Assembly (NCBI RefSeq): GCF_000002075.1
Contig: NW_004797311.1
Location: forward strand, 1,760,820-1,824,819
Source of the DNA: Aplysia californica
Lineage: Eukaryota
Length of the DNA: 64,000 nucleotides
Direction: 5' to 3'
The translations under genes and the position numbers were made by a program. Below the pieces are notes generated by a model. It worked only from the letters and a program-made list of their open reading frames with translations. It was not told where the DNA came from and made no database searches. Of the stretch, positions 20,035 through 50,703 are shown in pieces. Numbering within the stretch: the first letter of the stretch is position 1; each line of letters opens with the position of its first letter.

Positions 20035-20055
20035 TCAGCTTCTTTCAGTTCCAGC
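20035..20055 (-). CDS. TUBG1: Putative TUBG1 terminal exon (AGTERS-stop)
   Basis: Acceptor tgtcttgtctgcAG at 20057-20056 with an upstream CTTAAT branch-like motif; in phase with the exon 12 donor. Confidence 0.55.
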   Translation of the reverse strand, partial: AGTERS

Positions 20056-23000
20056 CTGCAGACAAGACATAATTAAGTCCAACTTGTTTGTAGCAAAGTT
20101 CCTATCATATTACAAACAGGTGATACATTTACCTTACCAAGAACAAAGTCTATGAAATTGTTGAAAAGTAAAATTACTATCAAAATCATTGTTCAGTTAA
20201 AGACAGGTTCGTTTCAAGGGTGCTGGATGCTTGTGCATGGAAGTAAGATATTACATGGTACATCTAAGTTAGAGAGATACAGAGAAAAAAAAGGGGGTAG
20301 CTTTAAGAAACAAAGAAGATAAAAAAAAAGAGGGGACATGTAATACATCATTTATATAGCCGTTGACTTTCAGCCCTCATACCTCTGCAGAGACTTAGAG
20401 ACATCCCCCCCCCCCTCCCCCCGGCAAACAAAACATAAATTTATGATATAAGCAAAACAGAGTCATGAATGTTTACCGACCTGTTGTGTACCCCAAGTGA
20501 GATAATCTGGCCGAGTGGCAGCGTTGTACTCATCCACCAGTTGTTGAAGAGATTCCCGAGAGGCATCAAATTCATCCAGATTATCTTTGAACATGGCTTC
20601 CTTCTTGAACTGGTCCATGAAAGCCTCTCTTTTCCGCAGTTTGTCATACTGCGTCAGTATTCTTTCAAATAGCTGATGATAAAGTAGGATGAAAGAGGAA
20701 TTATAATTCTCGTGTCCAAGGTTAATCAAAAGCACAAAAAAAGACAAAATCTAGAGTTCATGTTAACAATCAATTTTTATTGTCTTTGTCTTTGAAGCAA
20801 CACTGTTCAGCTTCCACTTTCCATACATTACATACTTTAATCCACCTACCTAGACCAAACTGAGGTGAGTCAAAAATGTATCTTATAATATTATCAAATA
20901 AAGTAATCTTCAAGCAATAACTGCTGTTACCATCTATTGGCCACTTTATTATAAACAAGAATAAGCTTACTGTGACTTGTTCCACAAGAACAGAATTGCA
21001 TTTTCCAGCACACAAAAACTTCACAGAAAATTGGGAGAAACTTACATGGGAAATATTTGTGTGATTAGCCAGCATGAGCCCGCTCACTCTGTGCGCTGTC
21101 TGTACGTAGGGAGACTTGCGGGACAATGCCACTTGGATACTGGCAGGACCCCACGGAATGAACTGGGCCAATTTCCGCTCTCTGATTCTTTGTAAACTTT
21201 TGTGGACCTAAAATACATCACATATGAACAAGTAATTTTTTTTGCAAAGACAAAATAGAAAAAAAAAGCCATTTTTTAGTTGGGCATAAATTTTATTACT
21301 TTCTGTTTTGTGGCGTCGGTGGCCTAGTGATGAGGCTACCGGACTCGTAATAGTGAGGTTGCAGGTTCGGGGGTTCGAGCCGCGGGTCCGACGTTGTGTC
21401 CTTGGGAAAGACACTTAACACGAAATATAATCACTTCACCCAGGTGGGAATGGGTACCCGGCCATAGAAAGTGAAAGATCTTGTCAGTAGGTTAGTGTTT
21501 AGCGCCTATAAATGGCTGCTTGCACTGTATTCTTCGAAGGAAGTTGAGGTTGTTTCAGAATGCTCTCAGGTCTGCTGGGGTAATAGCATAGATTGTGAAG
21601 CGCATAGAGCTTGCTGTTGAGCGGGGATTTGCGATATACAAATGCTATCTATTATTATTAACAGGGAAGAGGACGAGATGACAGGATGTTAAACAACAAA
21701 GACAAAACTTCAACTGCCAACGCCTCTCATATGAGGAGAGCTAGAGTCTTTTATTGCTTCATAATAAGCCCATGCAGGAAACTCCAGCTCTACCGTCAAG
21801 CGATGCTCAAGAGTAAAAGTCAGGGCTCATGGTCTCATATACAGGAAGGAAGTTCACATACAGTCGGAATTGTCAAAGATGGTCACCATAGTCGAGGGGA
21901 AAAGTGGTTGTTTAAGACAGGTGAACTTTATACACAGTCATTATAATGCTAAAACTATCCAAGAGAGGAAATGGGAAGAGATTGTTTGTACAGGTGACCA
22001 TTAGAGCAGTTTGAGTAAGGACCACCATGTAAGCATGACAGCTCAGCTGCAATGAACAAGTACAGTTACTGTGTCGAGAAGAGATATCAATTACAGTCGA
22101 ACCTGCCTTAATGGAAACCTGTATAAAATGGAAACCTGTCTTAACGGAATCTCCCCGCTCCCCCCTTGATATATTCCTCTTTAATTACCTGCATAAAACG
22201 GAAACCTGTCCAACGCGGAAACGGAAAGAAAAATCCGCTCCCTTCCGATGGTTTTACCTGTCTAAAACGGAAAATGTTTTGCCCGCTCAGCCCTGATTTG
22301 AAACAAAACTCGCAAGTTTGGTTCCGCCGGCTCTAAACTTATCACCATGGCCATGTCGCTGGGCAAGGAAGGGGAGTAGGGGTGCAATTTGGGGGTAGAT
22401 GTTACCCCAACATGTGAGCCCTGAGCAATGCTGATGGTCAGGGTAGTGTGGGTGTGAAATCTCACGACTGTCCGTGAGAGTGCTTGAGAAGCGAACCAGT
22501 ACGGAAACTTTCCTTGGTAGCCAGAAGCCAGAGGTGTGAAATTAGATTGACAAATGCCTGCCGCCCTGATCGTATGGCCAGCTGAGAAAATAGCTCCTCG
22601 AATCATTGGTACCATGATGGCAGTGAGGGGTGGCATTGGTTGACTGTGCTTGTTACACCGGTGGGTGGGGCTAAGGGTGGAAGCAAAGAAGAAATTCAAA
22701 CGTTTCTGTTTTTAATAGGTCAAACAGTGGTCCTATGAAAGGCAAGCAGTGGTTGTAAGACTGAAGCATGTCATTATCTGACAGGATAGCAGTTGAGAGG
22801 TGTGAAGTTTAGACCATTGCTTACCGATCGGACAAGCGATCCTTGATCTCACCAGCTGGGCCTTTGAACCATTCTCCCTCTAAATTCCCCCCTGTCTAAG
22901 ACGGAATTTTTTCTGGCTCCCTTGCGATTCCGTCTTACACAGGTTCGACTGTATTTCCTTATGCTGCCTTAATTGACAAAACAAATCTTCTACAAATTTA

Positions 23001-26000
23001 TTTGATAAAATATGGCAAGTCACCATGCAGATAGACACTTAGCACCTGATTAAATGGCCAGTTATGTACCTGAGAAAGTAGACAAACTTTATTAAACTTC
23101 CTAGTAATCACACTGTATTCAGACAGGAGATACAGTGAGTCAGCGATTGAGTGAGCTAGCTGTGATAGTCTTCATGAACAGCATAAGAGAATTGCATTTT
23201 TAAAAACAGTGAGACTACTTTATGACCGGAGCACCTCCATAAATTTTTAAAAAATTCATAAATTTTCACAATTGGTCACTTTTAAGGACAAGCGGGCTAA
23301 CCCAGATTTCAGGGTTTCCAAAAATCTTGATCTTCACCAAAAGTGGGCACTGCCCTACCTATAGGAGAAATTTGGTTTCACTTGTGTGTATATCTGTTTG
23401 GTTAAAGAGAACAATTTTGTTTTTTAAAGAAACTGAACAAGGGGAAAAACTTTACCTTCGATTTTTTCAAAACAGCATTTTTCGGGACAGCCCCCTTGTG
23501 CTTAAAAGCGACCAATTGTTATATTACATTGTAGCAATGTGCCCGTACATCTTATTAAAAATATCCCAAATGAATGTGAATAATGAAAAGGTAAAAGTAT
23601 GCATGTGGGCTACCTGTGTAGGATCCACTTCCCCTTGAATGATGTTCAAAATGGAGATGTAGCAATGATTGTTGTTCTGTCGCTGAACAGGGGTTGACAC
23701 CATCATGTTTTTGGGTTGCAACAATCTCCTCATCACATCCAGCACAGTTGTTTTTCGAACGTTTGCGACCTGGAACACGAAGAAAATATACAGTCAAACT
23801 GTCCACTGTCAAGGAGAACAGCAATTGTCTCGGGAAGGTGATCGTCTTGAACAGTTCACGAGTGTGTGTGTGTGCGTGGCTGTTCGTACAAGTGGTTGTC
23901 TTAAACAGTAGAGAAGGTTCTGTTATGGAGTGTAATGCAAAAGTAATAACGGACAACAGGGAAAAGGGCCTGGCAGAAAGGGGGCAGGATAATTGTTGGG
24001 ACTGACAGACTTGCAGATCAAGGAGAACTTTCTGTGTGGGAATTGACCCTTTAAATCCAGATCCTCACTTAAGTGGCCTTTTTGATTCTGCGTTGCAATG
24101 GATTGCCACTTCAGTGGCATTTAGGGGGTACCGATTTCGTCAACTCCAAGATCTACACCTGGTCCTATGCTACATTCACTATATACAGTCGAACCTGTGT
24201 AAAACGGCCACCCATTGTCATGAAAAAAAGTGGCTGAATAGCACAGGTGGCCGTCTTAGGCAGGACTGATCAAAATGAAGAAGGTAAATATCTTCTGATG
24301 TCTTTTTTTCATTGAAAAAGTATAATGCATTTTTTTCCGTTCAGTTAAACGTGTGGATATTGTTGACATCATTATGAATTTCAATGAGCAATCTTTTTAA
24401 ACTCTTAGAGTCACCTTTACCATCTCAAAGATTGAATGACTATTTGGAGTTTTCCCCTCCCAACAGAAGCCCAGGTTCTGCAAACCCAGAGTGTTAAAAA
24501 TATCTGGTAGGAGCCTAACAACCAGAGGGTCTGAATGTCAGTCACAGAAAAAGTAATTAAAAGCAGAACAATGACAAGATATGGATGAATATGAGCTCAA
24601 TACATGAACTCAAGTTCAAAGGCCAATGCACAGCAGCAACAGACCATGAGATTGAAAAATTCAGTATTGAACATATCCCGACCTCAGTGCTTTCTTGTTT
24701 TATCTCTATCTTTTTAAACATTGAAAATGTGACTTCTTAAGCTCACTCTTTGATATGAACTCAGAACTGTTTTCACTGTTATTAAAAATGGAGATAGGAC
24801 AAGAAAGCACCGAGGTCGCGATATGCTGAAAGAGTATGCTTTCATTTGATATGGGTGGGAATAGAATGTGTATGCTACTATAAAACTTGTTCTTCCAAGC
24901 AGTTGAGACAAGAGACCTTGGAAAAAAAACAACCAACAACAACAAACCATTCACACCAATGAAGGTCAACAGGTTAGGTTCAGCTAGACATGTTGGACCA
25001 TGTTATGCTTTTGATTTTCAAAATGTTCACCAGTATCTGACAGTGGAGGAAGGAGAGTGAACTCAGCATGTTATGACAGGAAAGGGGCAGTGGAAGGGAA
25101 GAGGTTCTATACGTTAACCCTATGCTACATTGTTTCCCTCACCCCACCAGAATAAAAAAAAGAAGCAAAACAGAAAAGCTACAAGGTGTACAGGAAAGGC
25201 TTGGGAAAAATCAGGTACTGCCTCTTATCCTAACATTATTCTTGACTCATTTCTCTCGGCAAACCCACCTTGTAATCTGTTGTGAGGGGTGTGTAGCCAG
25301 TCATCAGGAAGTGAAGACGAGGAGTTGGAATTAAAGAGGCAATTAAACCAATAAGATCATTGTTCATATATCCAGGGTAGCGGAGAGTGGTAGTAGAAGT
25401 AGCCATCACAGTTGACACCTGAAAGAAAGGAAGGTTACTTTGTATAATTAAAACATCAAAGTTACATTGTTCTTTTTAGTAGAGGTTTTACGGAAAAAAA
25501 AAAAAAGAACAATGTAACTTTGACGTTTTAATTATACAATCATTTATCACCCTGAGGACAAAATGAAAAAACAAACAAACAAAAACAAACATGAAATACA
25601 AATATACAGCGCTTCATAAAATGAGTGCTCACAATTGCATATGGTGTATGCTTCGGAACCCATTGCTGTTGGCTTAAAATATATTACGTCATATAATGAG
25701 TTACACAAATTATGGACACCATAATTTGTAAAACGAATGACATGACCTGTCTCTACATTTTCACCAACCACAAAAACTTTTATTCCACCCTTTATGGCTT
25801 TCACAGCTATAACATTTTGCATGTTCAAGTGTCCCTCTCATAATAAATTCAATCAGTGTAATCAATAAAAAAAAGTACAACACCATCTTGAAGGCACTTA
25901 GAATTATGTTAAGAAGAGCAGAGCACACAACCCTCCCTTCCCCCCTCATATTGTATTGTGACTCTGAAATATATCTTGTCCACTAACACAAAGATATACC

Positions 26001-29000
26001 AACTACATTTAAAGACGGTAGACATCAGATGAAAAAAACCTTCAGTTTTGACAAACTTGAGACTTTACTTTCGGATCTCAGGACAGGGGGCTGATAAGTG
26101 AGATAAGTCCATAGCAGGCGACCAGTCTCTGATTTCTATGTCTATATAACTAGTCCTCACCAGCTGGTTCACTTGTGTAAATGTTGGAGTGTCAATGTGA
26201 AGTCTGTCAGCTGCTATTCTGTTTAGAGCTGTATTATCCAACACAACCTGAAAGAAATTCCATTGCATTGGATTACTCTTTGATGCTAAAGATATGAGTA
26301 GAAAATCATGTCAAAGAAAATGTGGTAGAGACATCCTTTACAAAAATCACCCACGTAAACCAGACAAGCTAGCAAACATGGCAACATAATACTGTACCAT
26401 GGATGTCAATGAAAGTTCACTGAATTAAAACCCTGAGCCTCCACTACAATAAATATATAAATAATGAATAATATGCCTGCAGCAAGGAAGAAACATAGCA
26501 ACAAAATTAGAATACACAAAATGAAGTAGGAAACTTTAGATCTAGCGCCAAACAGTCAAAACAATGTTAGCGATACTTACTACGCAATCTGCATTCTGTG
26601 TGAGCCGTTTTAAAGTGAGCAACGAATTGTATGGCTGCACAACAACATCAGAGATTTCATCCACATTCGGAAATACAGAGTATGTCTGTGTCAACTTCTT
26701 TGGAAACCTGAGACAGAGATACCAAAATACAGGGTAAGAATATTCTTATTTACAGCCACAGGTCAAAGTAGAGAAAGAGGATCAGTATCTTACAATTGTT
26801 TCTTGACTGATTCAAAAGAAATGTTCCAAAAAATGGTAACACACACAATCTAGAAAAATCAAAGACATGAGAATCTCAATCACATGATGATTCAAGTATA
26901 GAAATTGACTTGTCACACAAATATCATCAGTTACATCATTATGCAAACGAAAGCAAATTCAATAGTAGAAGTCCCCGCCTTCTGGACCCCCCCCCCCCAA
27001 ACCTGTATAAAATAAAGAAATAACTGAAAAGCTCCCAAAACATTGAACAAATGACGACATCATGTTTAGAATGTCTTTCACAAATTCCCAGGTACTAACC
27101 TGTCATTCAATCTTTCTAAAATGTAAGAACCCATGCCAGATCCAGTTCCACCTGCGATAGAATGGCAGACAACAAAACCCTGCAAAAATAGTTAAAAAAG
27201 ACAATTATCATTTATAACTCGACAAGCAAAACAAAAAAATATTTTACCTAAAAGCATACCATCAATACACTAATGGAAGTCAGGTTCAGTTGCCTTTTCC
27301 AAGCACAGCGTTGCGAAAAATTTAATACTGTAAATACTATCTGAATTTCATTAAAACCTATTCTCCTCCCTCCCTCTTTATTATTGTACCTTTTACACCT
27401 GGGAATGAAATCACCCTAAAATTATATCAATAAAAACATGGTTCAATGTAGAATGTATAAGCAGAAATTTATGAGAAAATATTCATTAAAAAAAAAAGTT
27501 ATGGGAGGTAGAGTGGGGTCACCCCTGAGCAGCATTAGTTCTTGGGATTTCCCCCTGCACAGGAGCCTATTTACCTGCGACATTGAAGGGGTTAATGAGA
27601 GCAATATATCATTTAATTTTTTTATGTATACATGTACGTGTTTTTATGGTCCTGTACATCCAAGAAAAATTTCCCTCTGGGATAATAAAGTAATATCTTC
27701 TTATCTTAATGACTCCTGGATGACAACACTGTAAAAAGGTAAAAGCAAGCTGAAATGTATTCATAGTATAGCAGTGTTGATTTGCCGTTCACTCTTGATA
27801 AACATTGCCACACACACACAAAAATTAAAAAAAAAAAAAATCAAGAAGGCCAACCTCCAAGCTATCGCTGCCATCAGCTTCTCTATCTATGATGTCAAAT
27901 ATTTCATCATACAGCCGTTCCGCCTGTGAAAGACAATCATGTATAAAAATATTATTTTCACTCTTTGCACAGCACACACAATTACTACAAAAATGAAGTA
28001 TATAGTAAACAGCAAGGGGTACTTCATGATATTAAAAAGGTAAACACTGAAAGCTATGAAGAACAAAAAAGAAGGTACAACTGAAAGAGAAATATGTGTA
28101 CATAATGTGGCAAATTGTAAACTTACTTAAATGTTGCTTACCCATCACCTGAAACTTTCCACTAGCCATTGTGATGCAAAAGTGAGGTTCTTTGTCATTG
28201 CATGTGGAAAACATGAATTTGATTTCTGAGTGGCAAGGTTTTAAAATAAATCAAGTATTTCTGTCTAGAGGTATGTTGTATACCTTTCAGCCAAGGTTGT
28301 CCCTGACAGGAATGGTTGAAGTATAGCCCACTATCTGAAGTTCTAAACTGCGATGATGGGGGCATTAAACATTCAAATTTATTTACAATGTTTTCAATTC
28401 AAATTTAACATTCAGTATCAGACCTTAACATAGATTGCCATTGCAAGTATAATATCCACTGACGTACACAGATGTGCAGCTTTAGTCATCTACAAAGCAT
28501 AAGTTAACAAACAAAAGTACTAGGAAAAAAACAACAATAAAAAAACCCCAAACATTAAACGTGATCACCTGGGAATAGCCACTGGCCCAGTTGTTTCCAG
28601 CACCACCTCCGTGCTTTGACAGGTATACATTCTCTGGGTTGTACAAGTTTGCATATGGAGAGTTCATTATTGCATTGATCACCCTCGGCTCCAAATCAAG
28701 CAACACAGATCGAGGGATGTAATGCTCATCATCAGCCTATGAAAAATATCCACAACTTATGTTTTAATGTTCTGAGGCCCAATTTATATACGGCAAGAGT
28801 ACACTTTACAATGGAAGCAATGTGCATCTATACCCGGGAGGTTTTGAGACAGGCAGAGGTGACAAAGTAATTTGGTTCAAGCATGAATGTGTGGGATTTG
28901 TTGTTGTTGTTGTTGTTGTTGGGTGTGTGTGTGTGTGTGCACATGTGTAGGGCCCACAGTAAGGAGTAGAGAGGTTTGCAAATTGATGTCAATTTTATAG

Positions 29001-32000
29001 TCCTGAGGCGTTTATCAATCGGTTGTGCACACTATTACACGAGTAGGCAGATAAGATAACACAAAGTATTTCGAGCAATGCTAGGGTTCCCAAAGGCTGG
29101 CTTGTTTGCCTACCAGCACCACTGGAGTGTCTACTGCTTCTGTAATAAGACAAGACTTCAAATCAGAGCAAAGCTGACAGGAATATCGGAGGGCAAAACA
29201 AAGCAATGTGAAAGGTACTAAATTTTGCATTTTGAAGTGATTCAATTATTTAAAACATGTCTTGTCTCTATGCCTAGATTAAAGTTCAACTCCAGACACA
29301 ATCCTGTTTAGTCAAAGTTGCATCGTGAAATACTTATTTTGGTAAGTCAAGACTGGTTTAGAGCTGATTGTCATAACTGTTCATGGGACTAATGTTTACA
29401 CTGTAGACTAGTTGTAGCTGCCCTAGAATTGCACTCAGGCTGGATACTTCTTCATTGTTATCACCATATAAATCTCACCCTCAAAAGAGATGAATAGAAG
29501 TAACGTTTCAAATTTTTATTTGAAAAGTTATTTCCTCATCTTTCTGAGGTGTACCTGAGGCCAGATTTATGTGAAAAATATATTTAAAAAATACCAGCAC
29601 CAGTCCTTAAAAAGCGAGACAAGAGTAATTAAAAGGGACTTGATCACATGAGAGTGATATTAAAATACATCAATATAATTCAGACATAAAAGTCTAATAT
29701 GGAGAAGCATTAATATAGTCAAAGTTTTAGTTACAACATTAAGACACTGACAAACATCAAAGTTTGATTTTCAAAAGTAATTTTTAAACCAAATTTCCCA
29801 TGATTTTTAAAAATACTTTTGTCAACTTCAATACCTGATAGAAGAATACATCTTTCCGATCAGTGCCCTCAGTGGCATAGTCTTCTAAGATGCCATCTGA
29901 AAAAGAAAAGACACAAAAAACATCCTGAAGTAATAAAACCACAAAGTCAACATCAAATAACACACAAACATCTTAAAGTAATAAAACCACAAAGTCAACA
30001 CAAGATAAAACAACCACAAAGTCAACACCAGATAAAACTCTATACAAATATTTCTTTGCAGTAGCCATATCGTATGGGGTCTTAGAAATAAAGAAAACAA
30101 AATGCAAGGTAAACATTCTGAAAAACAGAAAAGTCTCAAAGACAACCAAAATATGAGTTTCAAATCTTAGAAGCCAGAGTGGTCTACACACTTAATTAAA
30201 AACAATTAGGAAGAGACAAAATCACAAATGCAGTTTCTCAGACATTCTAGCTCCCACTGGAAAACTAGAGAAGGCAAAAGACTTTCATTTCATGAAGACA
30301 ATTTTCCTGATCAGCATGTTGTGGCAAATCAAATTTGACTCTTGATTCAGGTTTAAAGCCAAGTGCCTGAAATATTTTTGAAATTGTCATTGGCCCTTAA
30401 CTTGCCATATGAAAAATTTTGAGATTTTCACAAAATCTACCAGACAGCGACTAACACACTCCTTAAAAGTAAGAGTGTTTTCTACTCTGTGTGTAGTAAG
30501 CCTACTTGATGAAAAAGAGGAAACAATGGGACATTTTTAAAGTTTGCCCAGCATGTTCTCTGTTAAATTTCAAAGCAAGGACATAAAACTTAGATAATGT
30601 CTAACGGTGCACCGACATTTTATGCAAGTGCAGGTCTCATTGACAATATTTTTCAGCCCAAAGCTTTTTTGTAATATCATCATCTCATTCTTCTTTCTTT
30701 TTTTTTTCTCTATTTAAGACATGCAAGCATATATAGCTTTGTTAAAGTAAAAACCAGCATTTTTCTTTCTTACACCTCATTTGTTGCTCCATGTTCTGCA
30801 TTCTTTAGCCCTGAATTTAGCACTGGGCCCATCTCCTCAGGCTCATACACAACATTCACATTCACTCATAAAAATTCTGTCTTCTAAATCAACAAAAACG
30901 CCCCCAAAGTAAGTCAAGTGCAGCTCACCTGGACTTATTCCATGCTCTAAACAGAGCTGCTTCCAAAATTCCATGCCAACTGAAATGAAACAAGTTTTAC
31001 TTCAAATCAAAACGATTACATAAATGAAGCAAGATCTTAAAATATAGTATTACCTCTTGTACAGTCAAACCTGTTTAAGATGAACACCAGTCCAAGACAA
31101 TCGTCTGTACAAACGACAACATCCACCCTTGTGTTTTTTTTGCATAAAATGACACTGTCAAGAGATCAACTTTTTTCCTCAGCAATTGGTGGCTGCCTTG
31201 GACAGGTTCAACTATACATATATATTTGTTTTCTTCAACTTCAATATAATGTATCCTTGTAGTTTAAACAGTGATCCAGTAAATGTTATAATGACAGTGT
31301 GCAGACCTCTTCCCAAGAATAGTATCTCAAAATTAGGTTCTTTTACTCCGAAACAGTAGCATACCTAAACCTTCGTTACTCTAAAATGTATCGAATAAGC
31401 CCCCCACCCCCTGCTTATCGATTTTCAGTTTTTTTGTGCACCCCTACCCCTGCTCCTTATTATTTTCCAGCTTGCCACGACTGACGATCATGTGAAACAT
31501 TATATCTAGAATCTAGATAACTGAATGAAACTTCTTATTTTTTTGGTAAATGGCAAATTACCCTCAGTATTAGTACCAGTATCAGGATGGGCACCTCAAT
31601 TTTCAAGGCATTTTTAAAACTTCCCAACATTGGTTTATATTTTTTTAATGAAACGGTTCCTAAATGGGAAAAGTAGTCACAGTAACTTTCTAAAATCATT
31701 AAAATTTCACAATCTCTTGTTCTTTTATTCACTGAATGAGAAATAAAACAGATTTGTTCCTACTAGTACAGGGTTATAAGGTTGGAAGTGCCACCACCCC
31801 CTCCACCTTTTTTCCAAACCCCCGTTTATTAATTTTTAACCACTTGTCCACCCTCCCTTTTATTAGATACCTTAGAGTTAGAGACAAAATTATAAATGGT
31901 GCTATTAGAACTTGAATTTTATAATCATAATTATACAAACATAAAAGTCGGAGTCAAGAATTTGCAAAATGTTGTGGTGTGTAAAATACGGGAAGGTCAG

Positions 32001-34798
32001 TGAACTTGTCACACGGTGAAGTCGTCACAGCTGAAAAACGTGTGGCAAGTTTACCGGAAAAAAAGTATCCAAATAACAGTGGACGGCACTTTTCTATCAA
32101 TTTACCATTGTGTGTCTGTCTTCCTCCTTTTCTGAGCTTTTTTTCCCTTCCAATCATTTAACCTGATAGAAGGCCTAACTTTTGCTTCACCCCCTGTCGA
32201 AGTTAGCCCTTTTCACCCTGTCGAATTCGCACCAGCTTTAAGAGTGAAAAGTACGCGGAGATGGAGTTTTCTGGAGCTTTTTGACTAAAAATAGTAGAAA
32301 CAAGTGGAATCCCAGGAAGCACAGATTTTATTTCTAGAAAGATATCAAATGTGCAACGACACATGGGCCAAATGATACGCAAAAGCCAAGTCTACGTTGA
32401 GGTGGCGTTGAAGTTGCCCCGGGGCCGATTTGCCCCAACCTATGTGACAAGATCACTGGAGGTATGTGATGACTTCACTGATATCTGTAAAAAATACATG
32501 TTGTGATGTATTAATAAGAACATGTCCACATATCAGGCGAGGTTCGTCCATAGAGCACGGTCGTGCAGTGTTGCTCAAAAATGTTTTAATGTTCTATTAC
32601 GTAAAACACCTACAATATATAAATATAAATAAAAGAAGCCAGAAACAAACACTACCCAAACATTATATCAAAAGACGTTTTTCTCACTGGCGCCGTAACT
32701 GTCATTTCTGTGTCTATAGCGCCGTAAAACATCTACTATGCCATGCCAAAGTTCATGCGCAGTATCAAAATATAGCAGGATATTCAACAGTGGAAACCTG
32801 ACCTATAAATCGCTCTTTGGATAACCAAATCGATGACGACACTCGTAGAGAGTTTGGCGGTACATTAATATTAATAAGACGGCACATCTGAAATGTGCTC
32901 CTGCCGAATAGTGCCGAAACATAGCCCACAGTAGGAAATCTAAAAATAAACGCGCTAGACTGTGTACTATTCTATGCCAAAATTATTGAAGCCCCGGAGC
33001 AATCCAGCGGAGTGCTCAAGTGAATTGTGATTGGTTCATTATCTTGCCGCTATTTTAAGTGACTCTGTGACCGTGAACCTGAGGGAGGTGAATGTGACAT
33101 ACTTAAGTCATCGTCCTATGAGTTGTGCTTTTGAACGGTTTTGTAGTGGCGTGGTGAAAGGTATTACCCAAGTGTTCAGTTCTAATGCAGGATGAATGAA
33201 ATTGACGTTTAGCTAACAAACAGATTTAGTTCTAGAAGTCAAAGTCACAAGTAAAAAGAATGAAAATAGAATCACACCATTCTCCCTCACCAACCCAAAG
33301 TTCCTAAAATTATACACCATCTCATTTACTATGCCCTTAACTATCTTCAATCTAATATTGCTGAATTGTGCACGCCCACTTTTTAGACAGACGAGCCGTC
33401 CCTGCCACATTATCACATACGTACTTAAAAAAACTTACGGCTGGATTGAACTTTGGTGGACCCACCGTGTTTATATTATTAATACGCACTAGGCAAACAA
33501 CGGACTGTACAGTCATGGGTCCTAATCGACCGCTACGCTTTGATTACGTCGACAGCGGGGGGGTTCAGGGGGGCCAGCCCCCCTGGTCTCAATGTTAATT
33601 AAGAAAACACTTGGAGGATGGCTTACGTTTGGTGGACCGCACCTTCAGCACTTTGGTTACGAAAACTTATAGTATTCGACAGCGGAGGGTGGATGGGAGG
33701 TGGGGGGGTTTCAGGGGGGCCTGCCCCCCTGGCCACAATGATAATTGAGAAAACACACATAATGCAAATCAATAATAGACAGAGAAAAGAAAAGGGGACC
33801 AGGAACATTTTAAATAGTTGGTTCTGCCCAAGAACTTTAGTGGACCCACATTGCCAGCCAAGGCTAGGCATTAGATACCATGATAGATGCGCGGGTGAAG
33901 TTTACCGGACCAGTGAAGAGAGGGGGAGACATGGTGGAGGTGGTGCCATGCCGTGACTAGATTGACCAATCAACGCTTGGGTCTAGCCACTCGCGCCAAC
34001 TCACGGGCTTTGCGGTGGAAAAATCCGGTAGAAACTTTCAGTTGACTAAATGAGCCCGAAGTGAGAGGATACAGGCAAGAGAGGGAGAGGAGAGAGAGCG
34101 CGCCGTGGCGGCCGCAAGGCCGCGCTGCGGCCAAGGAAGAACAGTGGACCAGCGCATGGCATCACACAACGCCCAAAAGTAGTTCCGCCCCCCCCTCAAT
34201 GGTGGGTCCACCAAAGTTCAATCTTACCAAACTTACTAATAATGACTGCATTTATACAGACAGTGCTATTCATACTCCATCCAAAGCATGCTATTGCTAT
34301 ACAATACAGGATCTATAGCTGCTTCTATGCGCTTTCTTAAAAATCACAACCATTGTTGCCCCAGCAGACCCTTAGAACTTGAACCAAGGCAACAATATTC
34401 TGTCTGGAGCACTCTGGAGTGAAAGTGAAGGGCAATGAGACTGATAGGCTGGCAAGCAGCGCTGTGGTTGATGGTGAGGTGAAATTTGACAAAGGAGAAG
34501 TGTTGAAGTTGAAGACCCTGGGCCTGGAGGCTGGAGGAAACGTTGGGGGATGAGGAAGACAGGGAGACAGCAGAACTAGAACACCATGCAATTATTAGGA
34601 TGCGGGAAATGGGGATAGATCTAGATCTAGATCTAGATCTAGAGAGGGGAGAGGGAAGAAAGAAACGATTATCTAGAAAGGAAAGACGTCGCCATTATTA
34701 TCTAATTATAATCGCTAGATCTAGATTCTTTTTTGTTTTTGTTTTGGCGCTGCTCCTGCGGCGACAAGGTCGTGTTTACATCGGCTCTGCTTGTAAAT

Positions 34799-34856
<58 letters not shown>

Positions 34857-35700
34857 TTATTTGTAACGGAGCGGGTTGTCCCAGCCCGTGAGACATGTAT
34901 TTACTTGGCCTAATGTCCTGTCTTGTTGTGCGTTTGCGTGAGTGCACCTTTAAGTCTAACTTTTGCAACGTCTACTGCCATTGTTAATGACCAACACAAA
35001 TTTCTCCCTTCGAGATGAATAAAGATTGTCATTGTCATTAGAAAGTGGCTATTCTCACCTGCCCGGAAGTTCTCGCAAGATCTACTCCTCCCCTCTTCTC
35101 TCTCTCTCTCTCTGTCTCTTTCTGAATACTGTCTATCGGTGTGGACGATCAAATTGACCAAAACAAAGTTAAAAAATGATGTTAAAACACAAAAGTAAAT
35201 TAATTTGGTTGTCTACAAAGATGCTACGGCTATTTAACTTTTCGAATCGAGCCGAACTACGCGGGTCGCCATTTTGTTTTGTTCTCTCTCTCACTCTCTC
35301 TCTCTCCCCTGCCCACAGACAAAATTGTACGCTTTTAGTAGGCTACAAGTACAGTTGTAATGGAACGTTTGTTCACAGCACAGAATTCTACAATTTTTCT
35401 CTTATCACAGTGTAGAATTCTGTGGTTTAGGGTGAACGCAAAATTTGTTGACATGCGCACCGGGTGAGAATAGCCACAAGACCCGCCTGCACTATTCTGG
35501 CCTTGTCATTATTATGATTATTGTTGTGGTGCTCTGCTAAATGTTCAAAGAGGCCGAATCTAGACTAGATTCTAGATTCTAGATATATCTAGATTTTGAA
35601 TATTGTGCACATGAAACTGCACTGATAAAATATTCAGTACTTAGTACTTACTCTGATTTCCACATTGTCCTAGCTGCAACGTTATTATTTCCCTAGGCAT
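20035..35700 (-). CDS. TUBG1: Gamma-tubulin, spliced gene with 12-13 coding exons, about 457 aa
   Basis: Exons joined at GT-AG sites with consistent phase: 35700-35652, 30979-30929, 29896-29835, 28736-28569, 27923-27855, 27179-27100, 26707-26581, 26247-26161, 25418-25269, 23769-23614, 21207-21046, 20672-20481 (or read-through to the stop at 20463), 20055-20035. The translation starts [18 protein letters not shown] and contains the gamma-specific [19 protein letters not shown], the GTP loop [12 protein letters not shown] and the C-terminal DYLTWGTQQ. Confidence 0.97.
20463..20672 (-). CDS. TUBG1: TUBG1 exon 12 ([18 protein letters not shown]...DYLTWGTQQ); either splices at 20481 or reads through VGKHS to the stop at 20463
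   Basis: ORF 20463-20747; internal donor CAG|GTCGGT at 20481/20480. Confidence 0.95.
21046..21207 (-). CDS. TUBG1: TUBG1 exon 11 ([34 protein letters not shown]...LANHTNISH)
   Basis: Acceptor ttttAG, donor GTAAG; 162 nt. Confidence 0.97.
21312..21660 (+). mobile_element. tRNA-derived SINE with CORE-like domain and L2-like (ATT)n tail, in TUBG1 intron 10
   Basis: A box TGGCCTAGTGA, B box GGTTCGAGCC; GTGTCCTTGGGAAAGACACTTAAC and CACCCAGGTG..AATGGGTACC; second copy at 47570-47826. Confidence 0.82.
22094..22951. mobile_element. Non-autonomous Tc1/mariner-pogo element in TUBG1 intron 10
   Basis: TA TSD on both sides; TIR CAGTCGAACCTG...CAGGTTCGACTG; subterminal GGAAACCTGT repeats. Confidence 0.85.
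23614..23769 (-). CDS. TUBG1: TUBG1 exon 10 ([25 protein letters not shown]...[10 protein letters not shown])
   Basis: ORF 23524-23778; 156 nt. Confidence 0.97.
25269..25418 (-). CDS. TUBG1: TUBG1 exon 9 ([50 protein letters not shown])
   Basis: ORF 25236-25418; 150 nt. Confidence 0.97.
25440..25539. repeat. 38-bp inverted repeat next to the TUBG1 exon 9 acceptor
   Basis: Arms 25440-25477 and 25502-25539, one mismatch. Confidence 0.9.
26161..26247 (-). CDS. TUBG1: TUBG1 exon 8 ([29 protein letters not shown])
   Basis: Within ORF 26065-26268; 87 nt. Confidence 0.96.
26581..26707 (-). CDS. TUBG1: TUBG1 exon 7 ([42 protein letters not shown])
   Basis: Acceptor ctcAG, donor GTAAGT; 127 nt. 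Confidence 0.97.
27100..27179 (-). CDS. TUBG1: TUBG1 exon 6 ([27 protein letters not shown])
   Basis: Tubulin signature GGGTGSG-type loop; 80 nt. Confidence 0.97.
27855..27923 (-). CDS. TUBG1: TUBG1 exon 5 ([23 protein letters not shown])
   Basis: Acceptor tttcacAG, donor GAG|GT; 69 nt. Confidence 0.96.
28569..28736 (-). CDS. TUBG1: TUBG1 exon 4 ([20 protein letters not shown]...[12 protein letters not shown])
   Basis: Overlaps ORF 28482-28706; AG/GT borders; 168 nt. Confidence 0.97.
29835..29896 (-). CDS. TUBG1: TUBG1 exon 3 ([21 protein letters not shown])
   Basis: Acceptor tttttcAG, donor CAG|GTATTG; 62 nt. Confidence 0.96.
30929..30979 (-). CDS. TUBG1: TUBG1 exon 2 ([17 protein letters not shown])
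   Basis: Acceptor tttcAG, donor G|GTGAG; 51 nt. Confidence 0.95.
31062..31214. mobile_element. pogo/Tc1-type MITE; related partial copies at about 24186-24270 and 21860-21930
   Basis: TA-CAGTCAAACCTG ... CAGGTTCAACTA-TA. Confidence 0.65.
31378..31880. mobile_element. MITE with imperfect terminal inverted repeats
   Basis: TACTCTAAAATGTATCGAATAA ... TTATTAGATACCTTAGAGT with repeated CCCCC..TTAT subterminal motifs. Confidence 0.5.
33439..34228. mobile_element. Non-autonomous DNA transposon, Merlin-like (GG ends, 8-bp TSD), in TUBG1 intron 1
   Basis: Perfect 23-bp inverted repeat GATTGAACTTTGGTGGACCCACC at 33444-33466 and 34201-34223; TSD AAACTTAC at 33431-33438 and 34229-34236. Confidence 0.82.
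34248..34600 (+). pseudogene. Degenerate RNase H domain fragment from a non-LTR retrotransposon
   Basis: IYTDS near 34250, and [23 protein letters not shown] from 34395, resemble the RNase H motifs xYTDGS and WxPGHxGxxGNExADxLA. Confidence 0.6.
35045..35477. mobile_element. MITE about 175 bp downstream of TUBG1 exon 1
   Basis: 15-bp inverted repeat GTGGCTATTCTCACC at 35045-35059 and 35463-35477; internal 14-bp inverted repeat CACAGAATTCTACA; no clean TSD. Confidence 0.65.
35652..35700 (-). CDS. TUBG1: TUBG1 coding exon 1 ([16 protein letters not shown])
   Basis: ATG at 35700-35698; donor A|GTAAGT; 49 nt. Confidence 0.97.
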
Positions 35701-36443
35701 CTTTATTCTTGAACCTGAGTTTTGGGATTTCAGAAAGGGATTCGTTTCAGAAAAGCGTCTTTGGAAACTACCGCACTCAGTCAAAAATCAATGAGACGGG
35801 AATAGCATGTCGCAAAACTGTCGCAGCAATAAAACAAGAGTTCAAGAAATTCACTGACATAGACTCTATATTTATTTGCGCTAGTGATTTCTATATCATT
35901 TAAATAGTCTGAAATATAAATTCTATAAAAAAAATCTTAGCTATCTAAGCCTACAAAAAATATGGCATTGAATTTCAAAACAACAAAATTGTGCTAGGTC
36001 AAATGAGCTAATTCAACGAGCTATGGCATTTGATTTTAGAAGGGCGCCAAACATTGAGAATGAATGCATCAGGAAACCCCCCTGTAGCACATGCGCACAA
36101 GAAGTAATAATGTTCCGTGCGCATGTCTAAATGAAAATTTCTGATATTTTTAAGAGAAAAATGAAGCTTTTGATTATATTTTTTTGTGAAATTTATTTCT
36201 AATGACTATTAAGACAAAATTTATCAAGAATTAACTGTTTAATCTATTTTCAAAAACGATTTTAATCACCCACAATGCAGTATCCACATGTAAACAATAA
36301 TAAACTCTAGTGTCTGAAGAATGTAATGAATGACCTGAATTTGTTTGATGTCACAACATCTGAAACGCAGCTGATTTTGTTTACTTATTTCTACTTCCTC
36401 GTCAATCTTTAGTCAGAAGCGTTGGTTTGATCCGATTTTTAAG
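35701..36443. promoter_or_regulatory. Putative bidirectional promoter and 5'UTRs of TUBG1 and RETREG3-like
   Basis: 743 bp between divergent ATGs. A central inverted pair ACATGCGCAC (36089-36098) / GTGCGCATGT (36117-36126) resembles NRF1/EWG sites. Confidence 0.75.
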
Positions 36444-36616
36444 ATGTCAAACGTCCACGACAGTGGCGGGGGAGGGGATACGAAGTCAATGGAAAGAAAA
36501 GTGAACTCATTCCTCAGCCCCTATGAACCCCTCATAATGACGGTGCAGAGTCTTCTTGTGTGGGAATGTCCATGGAAAAGTGCAGTACTCTTTGCCTTTG
36601 TGCATATTTTATTTTG
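36444..36616 (+). CDS. RETREG3: RETREG3-like exon 1 (MSNVHDS...[33 protein letters not shown])
   Basis: aagATG start; donor TG|GTAAGT. Confidence 0.92.
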
Positions 36617-49700: not shown

Positions 49701-50703
49701 CCCCGAGGATGTCAAAACATCCTTCATTTAGCAATGGTGATGATGGTATGTAATCCTTAACCTCGCTTGAAGCTAGGACAAAAGTAGTTAGATAGGATTT
49801 AGTTCCATCTTGATCATGTTATTGAGCATCATTGAGGAGTTAAATAATTAGTTGCTGTTTTTAAAGCATATATACCCTGTTTGTCAATCGAATAAAGTTG
49901 TCAGTGTCTTTAAAGCAAGAATATGTGTATTGTTTGAAGTGAGTTTGATTGAGTTTTTACAAAAAATGTCAAACTTAGAATTACTGGAAACTTTGGACTT
50001 TTGTTTTGAGTGGCAAAGTTAATCCGCATTGTGTTAATGCCTCTTTTTCAGGGTTTTGTTTCTTTTCTTTTATAAACTTCCTTTTTTGTGTGTTCTCACA
50101 GATCATCATGACCATGACTTTGAGCTGGATCTTACGCAGATGCCGTCATTTGATGACCTTGACAATACAGATGATGAGTTGGAACTTCCTGCCACCCCAG
50201 AAACCCCTAATTCTCACAGTAGTAGACTGAATTCACTTCAGTTTGCTGCCAAGCATTTCGCGGAGTCAGAGTCAGAGGATGAACACAACCTTTCTCCAGA
50301 TGCAGATTTCTCTCAAGCAGACGTTATGGATGCAAGCAAAAGTATCGCAGCTGCTGCATCTGCTCAAGCCTCTGCTCAGGCCTTAACAGGGGCTCTTGTT
50401 GCCCGGACTATTTCGTCCATGATGGAGACCGCTTTACAAGGTATGGCCACTCTTGGACAAGGCCAGACAGCGTCTTCTTCCAGCATGATCCCCAGAACTG
50501 GTGCAAAAATCACATACACTTGCTCTGAGGAAGGTGAAAGTATTGATTTCCAGAACCCACAGCCGACGATTGCTGAATCTGATGAAGACGATGATGAGAG
50601 TGAGATTGATGCAGCTTCACGGAGGGACCAAATTGCAGAAATTGAGAAAGATTTTGATTTTTTGGATGAGTTGGATCCAGAGTCACAAGATCATGGTGTT
50701 TGA
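36444..50703 (+). CDS. RETREG3: Reticulophagy regulator (FAM134/RETREG family, RETREG3-like), 9 coding exons, 489 aa
   Basis: Exons 36444-36616, 42063-42169, 43330-43360, 44015-44141, 45089-45173, 47259-47384, 47972-48066, 49622-49745 and 50102-50703 total 1470 nt in frame with GT-AG borders. Motifs match FAM134C: [30 protein letters not shown], [11 protein letters not shown], [15 protein letters not shown], and the C-terminal LIR DFDFL. Confidence 0.93.
37155..39460. mobile_element. Cluster of DNA-transposon remnants with palindromic subterminal repeats in RETREG3 intron 1
   Basis: Repeated TTCGGACTCGAGTCCGAA palindromes (37162-37281, 38078-38120); inverted CTATTTCTCCGAACG / CGTTCGGAGAAATAG repeats (38854-39449); MULE-like peptide remnant. 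Confidence 0.6.
40385..40648 (-). mobile_element. tRNA-derived SINE (third family)
   Basis: Minus strand starts GGGTGCGGTGGCAGAGCGGTTAGAG (A box), has a degenerate B box, an AATGGGTACC core and a (CTTTA)n tail. Confidence 0.75.
42063..42169 (+). CDS. RETREG3: RETREG3-like exon 2 ([35 protein letters not shown])
   Basis: Acceptor ttttcctcAG, donor G|GTAAGT; reticulon-homology hairpin. Confidence 0.95.
42505..43038 (+). mobile_element. tRNA-derived SINE with Deu/Nin-like core and Nimb/I-type tail, in RETREG3 intron 2
   Basis: A box TGGCCTAGAGG, B box GGTTCGAATCC; core GCACGTTAAAGATCCC...TAAGAGGAGG; tail GCGCTCATATGAC...GCGCCGTAAAAC plus A-rich end; TSD AGACTAGAA at 42496-42504 and 43039-43047. 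Confidence 0.88.
43330..43360 (+). CDS. RETREG3: RETREG3-like exon 3 ([11 protein letters not shown]), 31-nt small exon
   Basis: Acceptor tttcAG, donor GG|GTGAGT; needed to keep the frame between exons 2 and 4. Confidence 0.9.
44015..44141 (+). CDS. RETREG3: RETREG3-like exon 4 ([22 protein letters not shown]...HPLV)
   Basis: Acceptor cattcgcAG, donor GTAAGC. Confidence 0.94.
45089..45173 (+). CDS. RETREG3: RETREG3-like exon 5 ([28 protein letters not shown])
   Basis: C-rich acceptor, donor A|GTAAGT; hydrophobic hairpin. Confidence 0.92.
45462..45736. mobile_element. MITE with ~30-bp TIRs, Merlin-like ends, inserted in a (TCTG)n tract
   Basis: GGCACTCCTATACAATTGCGGTCCCGTTTG ... CAAACGGGACCGCAATTGTACAGGAGTGCC; flanks TCTGTCTC and TCTGTCTG (7/8 match). 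Confidence 0.85.
46935..47117 (+). mobile_element. Family A short retroposon copy in RETREG3 intron 5
   Basis: Near-identical to the reverse complement of 9994-10179; TSD TTACTCT at 46928-46934 and 47118-47124. Confidence 0.85.
47259..47384 (+). CDS. RETREG3: RETREG3-like exon 6 ([34 protein letters not shown]...)
   Basis: Acceptor ttcctcAG, donor A|GTAAGT. Confidence 0.92.
47570..47826 (+). mobile_element. 5'-degenerate copy of the SINE at 21312-21660
   Basis: Shared colinear blocks (AGTGAAAGATCTTG, GAAGTTGAG, ATAGAGCTTGCT, AATGCTATCTATTA). Confidence 0.8.
47972..48066 (+). CDS. RETREG3: RETREG3-like exon 7 ([10 protein letters not shown]...[10 protein letters not shown])
   Basis: Acceptor gtcctcAG, donor AAG|GTTTGT; phase-consistent. 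Confidence 0.82.
49622..49745 (+). CDS. RETREG3: RETREG3-like exon 8 ([20 protein letters not shown]...)
   Basis: Acceptor tttgtgcAG, donor G|GTATGT; AITDSE motif. Confidence 0.92.
50102..50703 (+). CDS. RETREG3: RETREG3-like last coding exon; acidic disordered tail with LIR motif (DFDFL, 50650-50664)
   Basis: ORF 50056-50703; acceptor ttctcacAG. Confidence 0.93.

What the first reader, a model, noticed from the sequence alone, without database searches (positions are those of the whole stretch)
20035..50703. TUBG1 and RETREG3/FAM134 are head-to-head, as in human: a possibly ancient conserved gene pair
Seen: gamma-tubulin (-) and a FAM134-family ER-phagy receptor (+) diverge from a 743-bp spacer. 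That spacer shows no recognisable transposon, while both first introns (about 4.7 and 5.4 kb) are full of them. Established: human TUBG1 and RETREG3 (FAM134C) are divergent neighbours on 17q21. Inference: if this is a mollusc, the linkage predates the protostome-deuterostome split, which suggests selection on a shared promoter co-regulating microtubule nucleation and ER turnover. It would also identify RETREG3 as the vertebrate paralogue that kept the ancestral locus.
Basis: partly seen in the sequence, partly recalled or inferred. Interest (0 to 1): 0.75.

Follow-up and report, generated by a model that had tools for sequence, protein, structure and literature searches.

The report
Gamma-tubulin and ER-phagy gene pair
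In this sea slug the genes for gamma-tubulin and an ER-recycling receptor sit head to head across one short promoter region, as reported for vertebrates, which makes it one more example of a known kind of anciently linked gene pair.

Summary
An intact, single-copy gamma-tubulin gene lies on the minus strand (12 coding exons, 456 codons). An intact, single-copy RETREG/FAM134 gene lies on the plus strand (9 coding exons, 489 codons, reticulon-homology domain plus a C-terminal LIR-like motif). Their start codons are 743 bp apart. Spliced transcript contigs from a public run end 543 bp apart, so this counts as a bidirectional promoter by the usual under-1-kb rule. The spacer is single copy, and both first introns carry high-copy repeats.

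The RETREG protein groups with Littorina and Patella, so the genome is a gastropod's. A paper's table gives RETREG3-TUBG1 distances of 0 bp in human and 496 bp in axolotl.

I scanned metagenome contigs for gamma-tubulin exon 1 and got 119 loci. Two unnamed animals, neither mollusc nor vertebrate, show the same head-to-head pair. Stony-coral-like contigs instead pair gamma-tubulin with INPP1. Four human 17q21 neighbours lie on other contigs here.

An ancestral bilaterian linkage is therefore likely, but it is not universal. Co-regulation is untested. The "ancestral locus" claim for RETREG3 is loose.

This is a new member of a known kind, the conserved divergent microsyntenic pairs. No main text I searched describes this pair. 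Interest is modest.

The parts
20463..35772 (-). Gamma-tubulin gene. Coding exons: 35700-35652, 30979-30929, 29896-29835, 28736-28569, 27923-27855, 27179-27100, 26707-26581, 26247-26161, 25418-25269, 23769-23614, 21207-21046, 20672-20466, then stop 20465-20463. The 5' UTR reaches at least 35772.
   Evidence: Pfam Tubulin and Tubulin_C collinear. PDB gamma-tubulin match at E 3.4e-30. GT-AG at 11 of 11 introns and 456 codons. Single copy in the genome. A spliced 1638-nt transcript contig covers 35652-35772 and joins to 30979.
30980..35651 (-). Gamma-tubulin intron 1 (4672 nt), rich in repeats. It includes a family of about 870 bp at about 32534-33404, and repeat-derived polyA RNA matches at 34850-35650.
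   Evidence: The joint 30979 to 35652 skips 4672 nt with ends CT..AC, which is GT..AG on the minus strand. 7653 first-look candidates, with copies at 88-93% identity on 38 other places.
35701..36443 (.). Spacer between the two start codons (743 bp). The part between the transcript-contig 5' ends is 35773-36315 (543 bp). This is the putative bidirectional promoter.
   Evidence: Sequence read. Single copy in the 927-Mb genome. GC 0.33, CpG observed/expected 0.86. Contig ends.
36089..36126 (.). Perfect 10-nt inverted repeat, ACATGCGCAC / GTGCGCATGT, with 18 nt between the arms, in the middle of the spacer. A third exact copy lies at 35451-35460. Candidate factor-binding sites.
   Evidence: Found by the repeat finder. 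3 exact matches in the window against 0.03 expected, and 0 of 100 shuffles reach 3. I picked the pattern after seeing it, so only the third copy is an independent observation. The function is inferred.
36316..50703 (+). RETREG/FAM134-family gene. The 5' UTR starts at 36316 or upstream. Coding exons: 36444-36616, 42063-42169, 43330-43360, 44015-44141, 45089-45173, 47259-47384, 47972-48066, 49622-49745, 50102-50700, then stop 50701-50703.
   Evidence: PF24456 reticulon-homology domain positions 1-183 over five exons. P0001 (489 aa) maps to all nine exons. GT-AG at 8 of 8 introns. A 2874-nt transcript contig lies on 36316-36618. Only contig C41 passes the Pfam cut-off in the genome, and the weak hits elsewhere are unrelated to P0001.
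36617..42062 (+). RETREG intron 1 (5446 nt), rich in repeats. It includes an element of about 970 bp with inverted ends at about 37151-38120.
   Evidence: 8546 first-look candidates, with copies at 89-94% identity on about 40 contigs. Positions 552-665 of the query match on both strands.
50653..50664 (+). C-terminal LIR-like core (F-D-F-L, flanked by acidic residues) in the last exon.
   Evidence: Read from the translation. By my regex, 24 of 44 full-length family members carry an acidic [F/Y]-x-x-[L/I/V] motif in the same place, and most of the rest do by eye. Littorina and Patella share the gastropod variant. Binding to Atg8-family proteins was not tested.

Best explanation
Two intact, single-copy genes, gamma-tubulin and the only RETREG/FAM134 ER-phagy receptor gene of this gastropod, are transcribed away from each other from a unique promoter region of about 0.5 kb.

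The arrangement is most likely inherited from the common ancestor of molluscs and vertebrates, not assembled twice. It has probably lasted because the two promoters are interleaved in a very short spacer. A break there would have to fall in at most 0.5-0.7 kb, and it would damage the expression of at least one gene, one of which is an essential single-copy gene.

Shown: the gene models, the orientation, the distance, that both genes are transcribed and spliced, their single-copy status, and the same pair in two other unnamed animals.

Inferred: the shared use of promoter elements, the age of the linkage, and the reason it has persisted.
For: - Gene models and spacer.
- Both genes appear as spliced transcript contigs in run X6, at depths 17 and 21.6, with 5' ends 543 bp apart.
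- RETREG exon 1 is covered in 3 of 3 polyA runs, and gamma-tubulin exons 1-2 in 2 of 3, all at depths below 2x.
- Single copy. The spacer is unique.
- The genome is a gastropod's.
- Vertebrates: RETREG3-TUBG1 at 0 bp in human and 496 bp in axolotl (PMC5766544 Table 3, passage seen).
- Metagenome loci L026 and L124: RETREG exons 1-2 lie on the opposite strand about 0.4 kb upstream of gamma-tubulin. Their gamma-tubulin shares 10 of 10 and 7 of 7 tested intron positions with this gene. Their RETREG exon 1 is 45-54% identical to molluscs and 46-50% to a hemichordate, and vertebrate hits are not among the 12 best.
- Four human 17q21 neighbours (PSMC3IP, VPS25, BECN1, NAGLU families) are on other contigs, so only the pair itself is kept.
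- Hundreds of such ancient pairs, mostly 5'-5', are known, and the mollusc Lottia keeps 448-492 of them (PMC3514665, passages seen).
Against: - Only 2 of 119 scanned loci show the pair. Most of those loci are not animals or have short flanks: 55 of 119 have at least 1 kb upstream.
- In eight stony-coral-like loci, gamma-tubulin's divergent neighbour is INPP1, or the spacer aligns to such a locus.
- Seven other animal-like loci show nothing recognisable, a retrotransposon fragment, or too little flank.
- No spacer sequence is conserved between this genome and L026, L124 or any other locus.
- Contig ends are not mapped transcription starts, and raw-read depth was too low to map starts or to judge strandedness.
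- The phylum of L026 and L124 is unknown.
- The human orientation is recalled, not shown by a tool.
Confidence: 0.6

Rival explanations
1. Neutral retention. The pair is ancestral but under no special constraint. It survives in slowly rearranging genomes (gastropod, vertebrates) only because a spacer of 0.5-0.7 kb is a tiny target for breakpoints, and it has been lost where rearrangement was faster.
For: The pair is absent in corals, and no spacer sequence is conserved. Short intergenic distance goes with gene-pair conservation in general (PMC2871058, passages seen). Molluscs keep most ancient pairs (PMC3514665).
Against: Four human neighbours of the pair are on other contigs here, so the neighbourhood was reshuffled around an intact pair. 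Both first introns accepted many repeat insertions while the spacer took none. That is weak evidence for so short a stretch.
Confidence: 0.25
2. Adaptive co-regulation. The shared promoter is kept because microtubule nucleation and ER turnover or shaping must be expressed together.
For: Both mRNAs are present at similar contig depth in one run (17 and 21.6). A perfect inverted 10-mer sits centrally in the spacer, with a third copy just inside gamma-tubulin intron 1. Conserved divergent metazoan pairs are enriched for shared function (PMC2871058 and PMC3514665, passages seen).
Against: There are no expression series. In three polyA runs the depths are under 2x and do not track each other in any way that can be judged. 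Corals pair gamma-tubulin with a different gene. I found no paper linking the two genes functionally or as a bidirectional pair.
Confidence: 0.12
3. Convergence. The head-to-head arrangement arose independently in gastropods, in vertebrates and in the lineage of L026 and L124.
For: Corals, an outgroup to bilaterians, have another partner. The lineage of L026 and L124 is unplaced.
Against: The same two single-copy genes, in the same orientation, with spacers under 1 kb, in three lineages. With thousands of possible neighbours, chance adjacency is very improbable (inference).
Confidence: 0.03

Closest known systems
Vertebrate TUBG1-RETREG3 (FAM134C) neighbours on human 17q21
   Same: The same two gene families are immediate neighbours with a very short gap: 0 bp in human with overlapping exons, 496 bp in axolotl (PMC5766544 Table 3), and 543-743 bp here. 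The divergent orientation in human is as I recall it.
   Different: Here there is one gamma-tubulin and one RETREG gene in the genome. Vertebrates have three RETREG paralogues, and mammals have two tandem TUBG genes (recalled). The flanking genes of 17q21 are not nearby here.
Conserved ancestral microsyntenic pairs with bidirectional promoters, such as HSPE1-HSPD1 (Irimia et al. 2012, PMC3514665; Davila Lopez et al. 2010, PMC2871058)
   Same: Unrelated genes in 5'-5' orientation with a spacer under 1 kb, kept between a mollusc and vertebrates.
   Different: This pair is not named in the main text of either paper. Their lists are in supplements I could not open. Co-expression is not shown here.
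FAM134/RETREG ER-phagy receptors
   Same: An N-terminal reticulon-homology domain (PF24456, positions 1-183) and a C-terminal LIR-like motif.
   Different: The LIR core is the gastropod variant F-D-F-L, not the F-E-[F/M/L]-L seen in most family members. Function is untested.
Coral gamma-tubulin-INPP1 divergent pair (metagenome loci L014, L039, L061, L080, L092, L123)
   Same: Gamma-tubulin again heads a divergent pair with a short spacer.
   Different: The partner is inositol polyphosphate 1-phosphatase (PDB 1inp and 6wry at E about 1e-10; nearest named homologue from Oculina patagonica at 72% identity), not RETREG.

Membership tests
Gamma-tubulin | Tubulin/FtsZ GTPase domain followed by the tubulin C-terminal domain | tested here: met
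   PF00091 in three exons (35-37.5 bits, profile positions 40-182). PF03953 in three exons (21-64 bits, profile positions 1-120), in gene order.
Gamma-tubulin | Closer to gamma- than to alpha- or beta-tubulins | tested here: met
   Exon 4 against solved structures: gamma-1 chains at E 3.4e-30 (107 bits), beta chains at about 1e-9. The other tubulin loci in the genome are only 29-48% identical.
Gamma-tubulin | Open, complete reading frame | tested here: met
   12 exons, 11 of 11 introns GT-AG, 1368 nt, TGA stop. The exon 1-2 junction is seen in a transcript contig.
RETREG/FAM134 ER-phagy receptors | N-terminal reticulon-homology domain | tested here: met
   PF24456 positions 1-34, 25-70, 80-120, 120-150 and 145-183 in five successive exons (E 6e-10, 3e-11, 3e-5, 2e-7, 2e-9). 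Four of the five are over the 27-bit cut-off.
RETREG/FAM134 ER-phagy receptors | C-terminal LC3-interacting region | tested here: inconclusive
   The motif F-D-F-L, flanked by acidic residues, lies 12 residues from the C-terminus. It sits where family members carry [D/E][F/Y]E[F/M/I][L/I]. No solved structure matched the C-terminal exon. Binding was not tested.
RETREG/FAM134 ER-phagy receptors | Orthology with named family members | tested here: met
   An exon-1 profile found 134 representatives. Of 30 looked up, 22 carry names, and 14 of those are named reticulophagy regulator or FAM134. P0001 sits in a mollusc clade (support 100 in a quick tree).
Bidirectional (divergent) promoter pair | Opposite strands, 5' ends facing, start sites under 1 kb apart, nothing in between | tested here: met
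   The ATGs are 743 bp apart. The transcript-contig 5' ends are 543 bp apart. The spacer is single copy, and the window has no Rfam or tRNA hit. True start sites are not mapped.
Bidirectional (divergent) promoter pair | Correlated expression, with shared elements acting in both directions | not testable with these tools
   One reads call only. Depths were 0-1.6x in three polyA runs, and contig depths were 17 and 21.6 in one run.
Conserved ancestral microsyntenic pair | Adjacency kept in several distant animal lineages | tested here: inconclusive
   Present in this gastropod, in human and axolotl, and in two unnamed animals. Absent in stony-coral-like loci. Named invertebrate genomes could not be examined.

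The most novel reading that the evidence does not exclude
Gamma-tubulin and the ancestral ER-phagy receptor have shared one bidirectional promoter since before molluscs and vertebrates split, in at least three bilaterian lineages. The reason would be that the cell needs them switched together, for example to couple spindle or centrosome activity with ER remodelling at division. The central inverted 10-mer would be part of that shared switch.
Probability: 0.12. Interest if true: 0.55.

Novelty: new member of a known kind. Interest (0 to 1): 0.3.

Why it matters
If the linkage is ancestral, this is a clean, compact case for asking why some divergent pairs resist rearrangement for over half a billion years. 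It has two unrelated single-copy genes, a spacer of about 0.5 kb, and a natural contrast in corals, where gamma-tubulin has a different partner. It also gives a positional argument for which vertebrate RETREG paralogue sits in the least-disturbed context.

The phenomenon itself is well documented, however. Both gene models are already in public annotation. No functional link between the two genes is shown.

Tried and rejected
Things that led nowhere:
- Protein atlas look-up of the L026 RETREG exon 1. It returned only weak MatE-like rows at 0.84-0.86, so it was no help in naming the organism.
- Solved-structure search with the RETREG C-terminal exon. It returned only chance HU-beta rows at E 0.26-1.2.
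- Search of this genome with the coral INPP1 exon. It found nothing, which shows nothing.
- Extended synteny. The TBPIP/PSMC3IP, ESCRT-II/VPS25, APG6/BECN1 and NAGLU families all lie on other contigs (C319, C440, C229, C1133/C493/C508/C662). The assembly has 4332 contigs, so a shared chromosome cannot be excluded.
- Shared spacer motifs. No 8-10-mer is common to this spacer and to those of L026 and L124. blastn of 35400-36700 against all 119 loci aligned only the coding exon 1 that the search pattern had selected.
- Rfam and tRNA scans of the window found none.
- Five literature searches. No main text pairs TUBG1 with FAM134C/RETREG3 as a bidirectional or microsyntenic pair. Other than PMC5766544, the papers naming both that I opened (PMC12086425, PMC9173771, PMC8688507) only list them among genes; the rest I saw only as titles and abstract starts in the listing. 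Supplementary tables of PMC3514665 and PMC2871058 may list the pair, but they were closed.

Considered and dropped:
- Fetching named gamma-tubulins and reading adjacency from consecutive locus tags or accessions next to KUTeg_008169, ScPMuIL_016562 and the like. Exon-sized queries fall outside the length window of the search for homologous proteins, and a joined model is barred.
- A gamma-tubulin tree to place L026 and L124. It would have needed joined exons.
- The weak PF24456 hits on C122, C123, C509, C140 and C237 as a possible second RETREG copy. They have no similarity to P0001.
- L026 and L124 as fish DNA. The vertebrate RETREG hits are not among their 12 best matches.

The joined step was left out throughout. 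Both spliced models were searched exon by exon only, and frames were checked by arithmetic on exon lengths.

Full report
WHAT IS THERE

The window is G000:C41:1760820-1824819 of an assembly with 927,310,431 bases in 4332 contigs.

On the minus strand, stop-free segments encode pieces of a tubulin in gene order. Pfam places the Tubulin GTPase domain in three exons and Tubulin_C in three later ones. Exon 4 matches solved gamma-1 tubulin chains at residues 55-111 with E 3.4e-30, while beta-tubulins reach only about 1e-9. I set exon ends from reading frames and splice signals. All 11 introns are GT-AG, the twelve coding exons add up to 1368 nt (456 codons), and the frame ends in TGA at 20465-20463. 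The ATG is at 35700-35698. A whole-genome search with exon 4 finds this locus at 100% identity, and the next best loci are only 29-48% identical, so gamma-tubulin is single copy.

On the plus strand, the ATG at 36444 opens a gene whose exons carry Pfam PF24456, the RETREG1-3/ARL6IP-like reticulon-homology domain. Profile positions 1-34, 25-70, 80-120, 120-150 and 145-183 fall in five successive exons. A profile of exon 1 searched against 1.84 billion representative proteins returned 134 hits. The best, P0001 (489 aa), maps to all nine exons. It is 90-100% identical to eight of them. The overlapping hit on the sixth exon reads 70%. That mapping corrected my first guess for the exon 2 acceptor to 42063. 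With those ends, all 8 introns are GT-AG and the exons add up to 1467 nt, which is 489 codons.

The last exon ends in an acidic stretch holding F-D-F-L (50653-50664). Family members carry their LC3-interacting motif in the same position. Littorina and Patella share this gastropod variant.

In the whole genome, only contig C41 passes the family cut-off. The five weak hits elsewhere have no similarity to P0001. So there is one RETREG gene.

All searches were exon by exon, and frames were checked by arithmetic.

THE SPACER AND TRANSCRIPTS

The two start codons are 743 bp apart (35701-36443). I laid three polyA RNA runs (raw reads) and one run kept as contigs on 30850-36849.

The contig run holds two relevant contigs:
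- A 1638-nt contig at depth 17 covers 35652-35772 and jumps to 30979. It skips 4672 nt with ends that read GT..AG on the minus strand.
- A 2874-nt contig at depth 21.6 covers 36316-36618.

Both genes are therefore transcribed, and gamma-tubulin is seen spliced as modelled. The assembled 5' ends are 543 bp apart. Contig ends are not mapped start sites.

The raw reads are too few to say more. Mean depth is 0.2-1.6x on RETREG exon 1 in 3 of 3 runs, and 0.25-1.3x on gamma-tubulin exons 1-2 in 2 of 3 runs. They show no start clusters, no usable strand information and no basis for judging co-expression.

The spacer has one match in the genome, itself. The two first introns (4672 and 5446 nt) gave 7653 and 8546 first-look candidates. 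These include a repeat of about 870 bp (window 32534-33404) and an element of about 970 bp with inverted ends (37151-38120), each with dozens of copies at 88-94% identity. A repeat-free 743 bp is not by itself remarkable, though.

The spacer has GC 0.33 and CpG observed/expected 0.86. Its most striking feature is a perfect inverted 10-mer at 36089-36098 and 36117-36126. A third exact copy lies at 35451-35460. That makes 3 exact matches in the window against 0.03 expected. I chose the pattern after seeing it, so only the third copy counts as independent. I recall that its core resembles half-sites of NRF1-type factors. That is a lead, not a test.

WHOSE GENOME

Names attached to the RETREG relatives and a quick maximum-likelihood tree of 44 full-length hits place P0001 with Littorina saxatilis (support 94). 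Those two group with Patella (98), inside a mollusc clade with bivalves (100). Earlier notes of this scan call the genome a sea slug's. The assembly size and contig number match what I recall of the public Aplysia californica assembly. That is recall, not a tool result. The "if this is a mollusc" condition is met.

IS THE PAIR OLD?

A table in PMC5766544 (passage seen) lists RETREG3 and TUBG1 as neighbours, at 0 bp in human (overlapping exons) and 496 bp in axolotl. That the human genes are divergent is my recollection.

No eukaryotic genome collection was available. I therefore scanned metagenome contigs for a degenerate pattern of gamma-tubulin exon 1 plus the start of its intron. Of these, 76 have at least 500 bp upstream of the ATG, and 55 have at least 1 kb.

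I searched all 119 loci for RETREG in four ways:
- the five exon peptides from this window;
- three-sequence profiles of exons 1 and 2;
- 45 full-length family proteins;
- a 133-sequence exon-1 profile.

All four methods found the same two loci, L026 and L124, and nothing else. The next best exon-1 score was E 0.66. In both loci, RETREG exons 1 and 2 lie on the opposite strand, with the likely start codon about 0.4 kb upstream of the gamma-tubulin ATG. Pfam confirms the domain in L026.

Their gamma-tubulin genes share 10 of 10 and 7 of 7 tested intron positions with this gene, and are 84-88% identical to its exon cores. Their RETREG exon 1 is 45-54% identical to molluscs, 46-50% to a hemichordate, and closest to unnamed transcript-derived proteins. 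Vertebrate hits are not among the 12 best. They are two related animals, neither mollusc nor vertebrate, and I could not place them further.

AGAINST UNIVERSALITY

Eight loci belong to a stony-coral-like group. L014 and L039 are near-identical, as are L080 and L092. The others are L123, L061, L027 and L082.

In L014, L039, L061, L080, L092 and L123, the gene lying head to head with gamma-tubulin is inositol polyphosphate 1-phosphatase. It matches solved INPP1 structures at E about 1e-10. The nearest named protein is from the coral Oculina patagonica at 72% identity, followed by the anemone Actinia tenebrosa at 43%. L027 and L082 have only about 450 bp of flank, which aligns to the spacers of that group.

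Seven further animal-like loci show no recognisable neighbour, a retrotransposon fragment, or too little flank: L016 (95% identical to L084), L084, L038, L054, L122, L037 and L094. The remaining loci have few shared introns and 50-79% identity, so they are probably not animals.

The tally among 17 animal-like loci is: RETREG in 2, INPP1 or its spacer in 8, and undetermined in 7.

In this genome, four families that flank the pair on human 17q21 lie on other contigs: PSMC3IP, VPS25, BECN1 and NAGLU. Their human positions are recalled. Only the pair itself is kept, not a block.

HOW IT MOST LIKELY WORKS

Two promoters share about 0.5 kb of unique DNA and fire in opposite directions.

The same two single-copy genes, in the same orientation and with spacers under 1 kb, are seen in a gastropod, in vertebrates and in a third animal lineage. 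Inheritance from a bilaterian ancestor explains this far better than chance.

Why the pair lasted is not settled. I favour entangled promoters: any break would hurt at least one gene. Purely neutral survival of a tiny breakpoint target comes second, and selection for co-regulation of microtubule nucleation with ER turnover third. Nothing tests that third reading yet. Corals show that gamma-tubulin can work with another partner.

The claim about RETREG3 needs rewording. The three vertebrate paralogues presumably come from the early vertebrate genome duplications (recalled), so each locus descends from the ancestral one. Gamma-tubulin was kept beside RETREG3 only. It is consistent that 13 of the 22 named relatives I looked up are labelled "regulator 3", "3-like" or "FAM134C" by automatic naming. 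This is weak evidence.

NOVELTY

Conserved divergent pairs are well known. Irimia et al. report hundreds. The mollusc Lottia keeps 448-492 of them, and 54.8% are 5'-5' in human (PMC3514665, passages seen). Davila Lopez et al. reach similar conclusions (PMC2871058, passages seen).

Five full-text searches found no main text that describes TUBG1 with FAM134C/RETREG3 as such a pair. PMC12672016 does not name them either. Both gene models are already public.

I file this as a new member of a known kind, of modest interest.

Noticed in passing
window 36089-36126 and 35451-35460: A perfect inverted 10-mer pair (ACATGCGCAC, 18 nt between the arms) lies in the spacer, and a third exact copy lies about 190 bp inside gamma-tubulin intron 1. 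That is 3 exact matches against 0.03 expected in the window. It may be a binding-site cluster, and any resemblance to NRF1-type half-sites is only recalled.
   Followed up: partly
window 34850-35650, most sharply 35194-35241: PolyA RNA reads pile up here at 30-90x in all three runs, inside gamma-tubulin intron 1. The same foreign sequence continues on both sides and there are polyA tails, so these are transcripts of repeats located elsewhere. They are not part of either gene.
   Followed up: no
window 32534-33404 and 37151-38120: Two high-copy interspersed repeats. One is an element of about 870 bp with 38 other copies at 88-93% identity among those scored. The other is an element of about 970 bp with inverted ends and about 40 copies at 89-94% identity, and it contains the 33-nt tandem repeat at 37163-37288.
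   Followed up: partly
window 16104-18365 (+): An open 754-aa frame with a reverse-transcriptase domain (RVT_1, E 1e-30) plus DUF6451. It is a non-LTR retrotransposon copy downstream of gamma-tubulin.
   Followed up: partly
L014:354-2592 (minus strand), also L039, L061, L080, L092, L123: In stony-coral-like metagenome contigs, gamma-tubulin lies head to head with inositol polyphosphate 1-phosphatase, about 0.4 kb between start codons. I recall human INPP1 on 2q, in a region paralogous to 17q, which hints that all three genes shared an ancestral neighbourhood.
   Followed up: partly
L016, L084, L038, L054, L122 (about 170-300 bp spanning the gamma-tubulin ATG, mostly upstream): Five contigs of unnamed animals align at 75-82% identity over a stretch that is mostly non-coding sequence just upstream of the gamma-tubulin start. 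This looks like a conserved core promoter within one animal group. None of them shows RETREG in the 250-830 bp of flank available.
   Followed up: no
G000 contigs C1133, C493, C508, C662: The NAGLU family has at least five separate N-terminal matches in this genome, some containing stop codons. This suggests a lineage-specific expansion with pseudogenes.
   Followed up: no
L026:6500-10000 (minus strand): Downstream of gamma-tubulin in L026 lie exons that read like a HECT-type ubiquitin ligase with a WW domain. This is by eye only and no tool was run on it.
   Followed up: no
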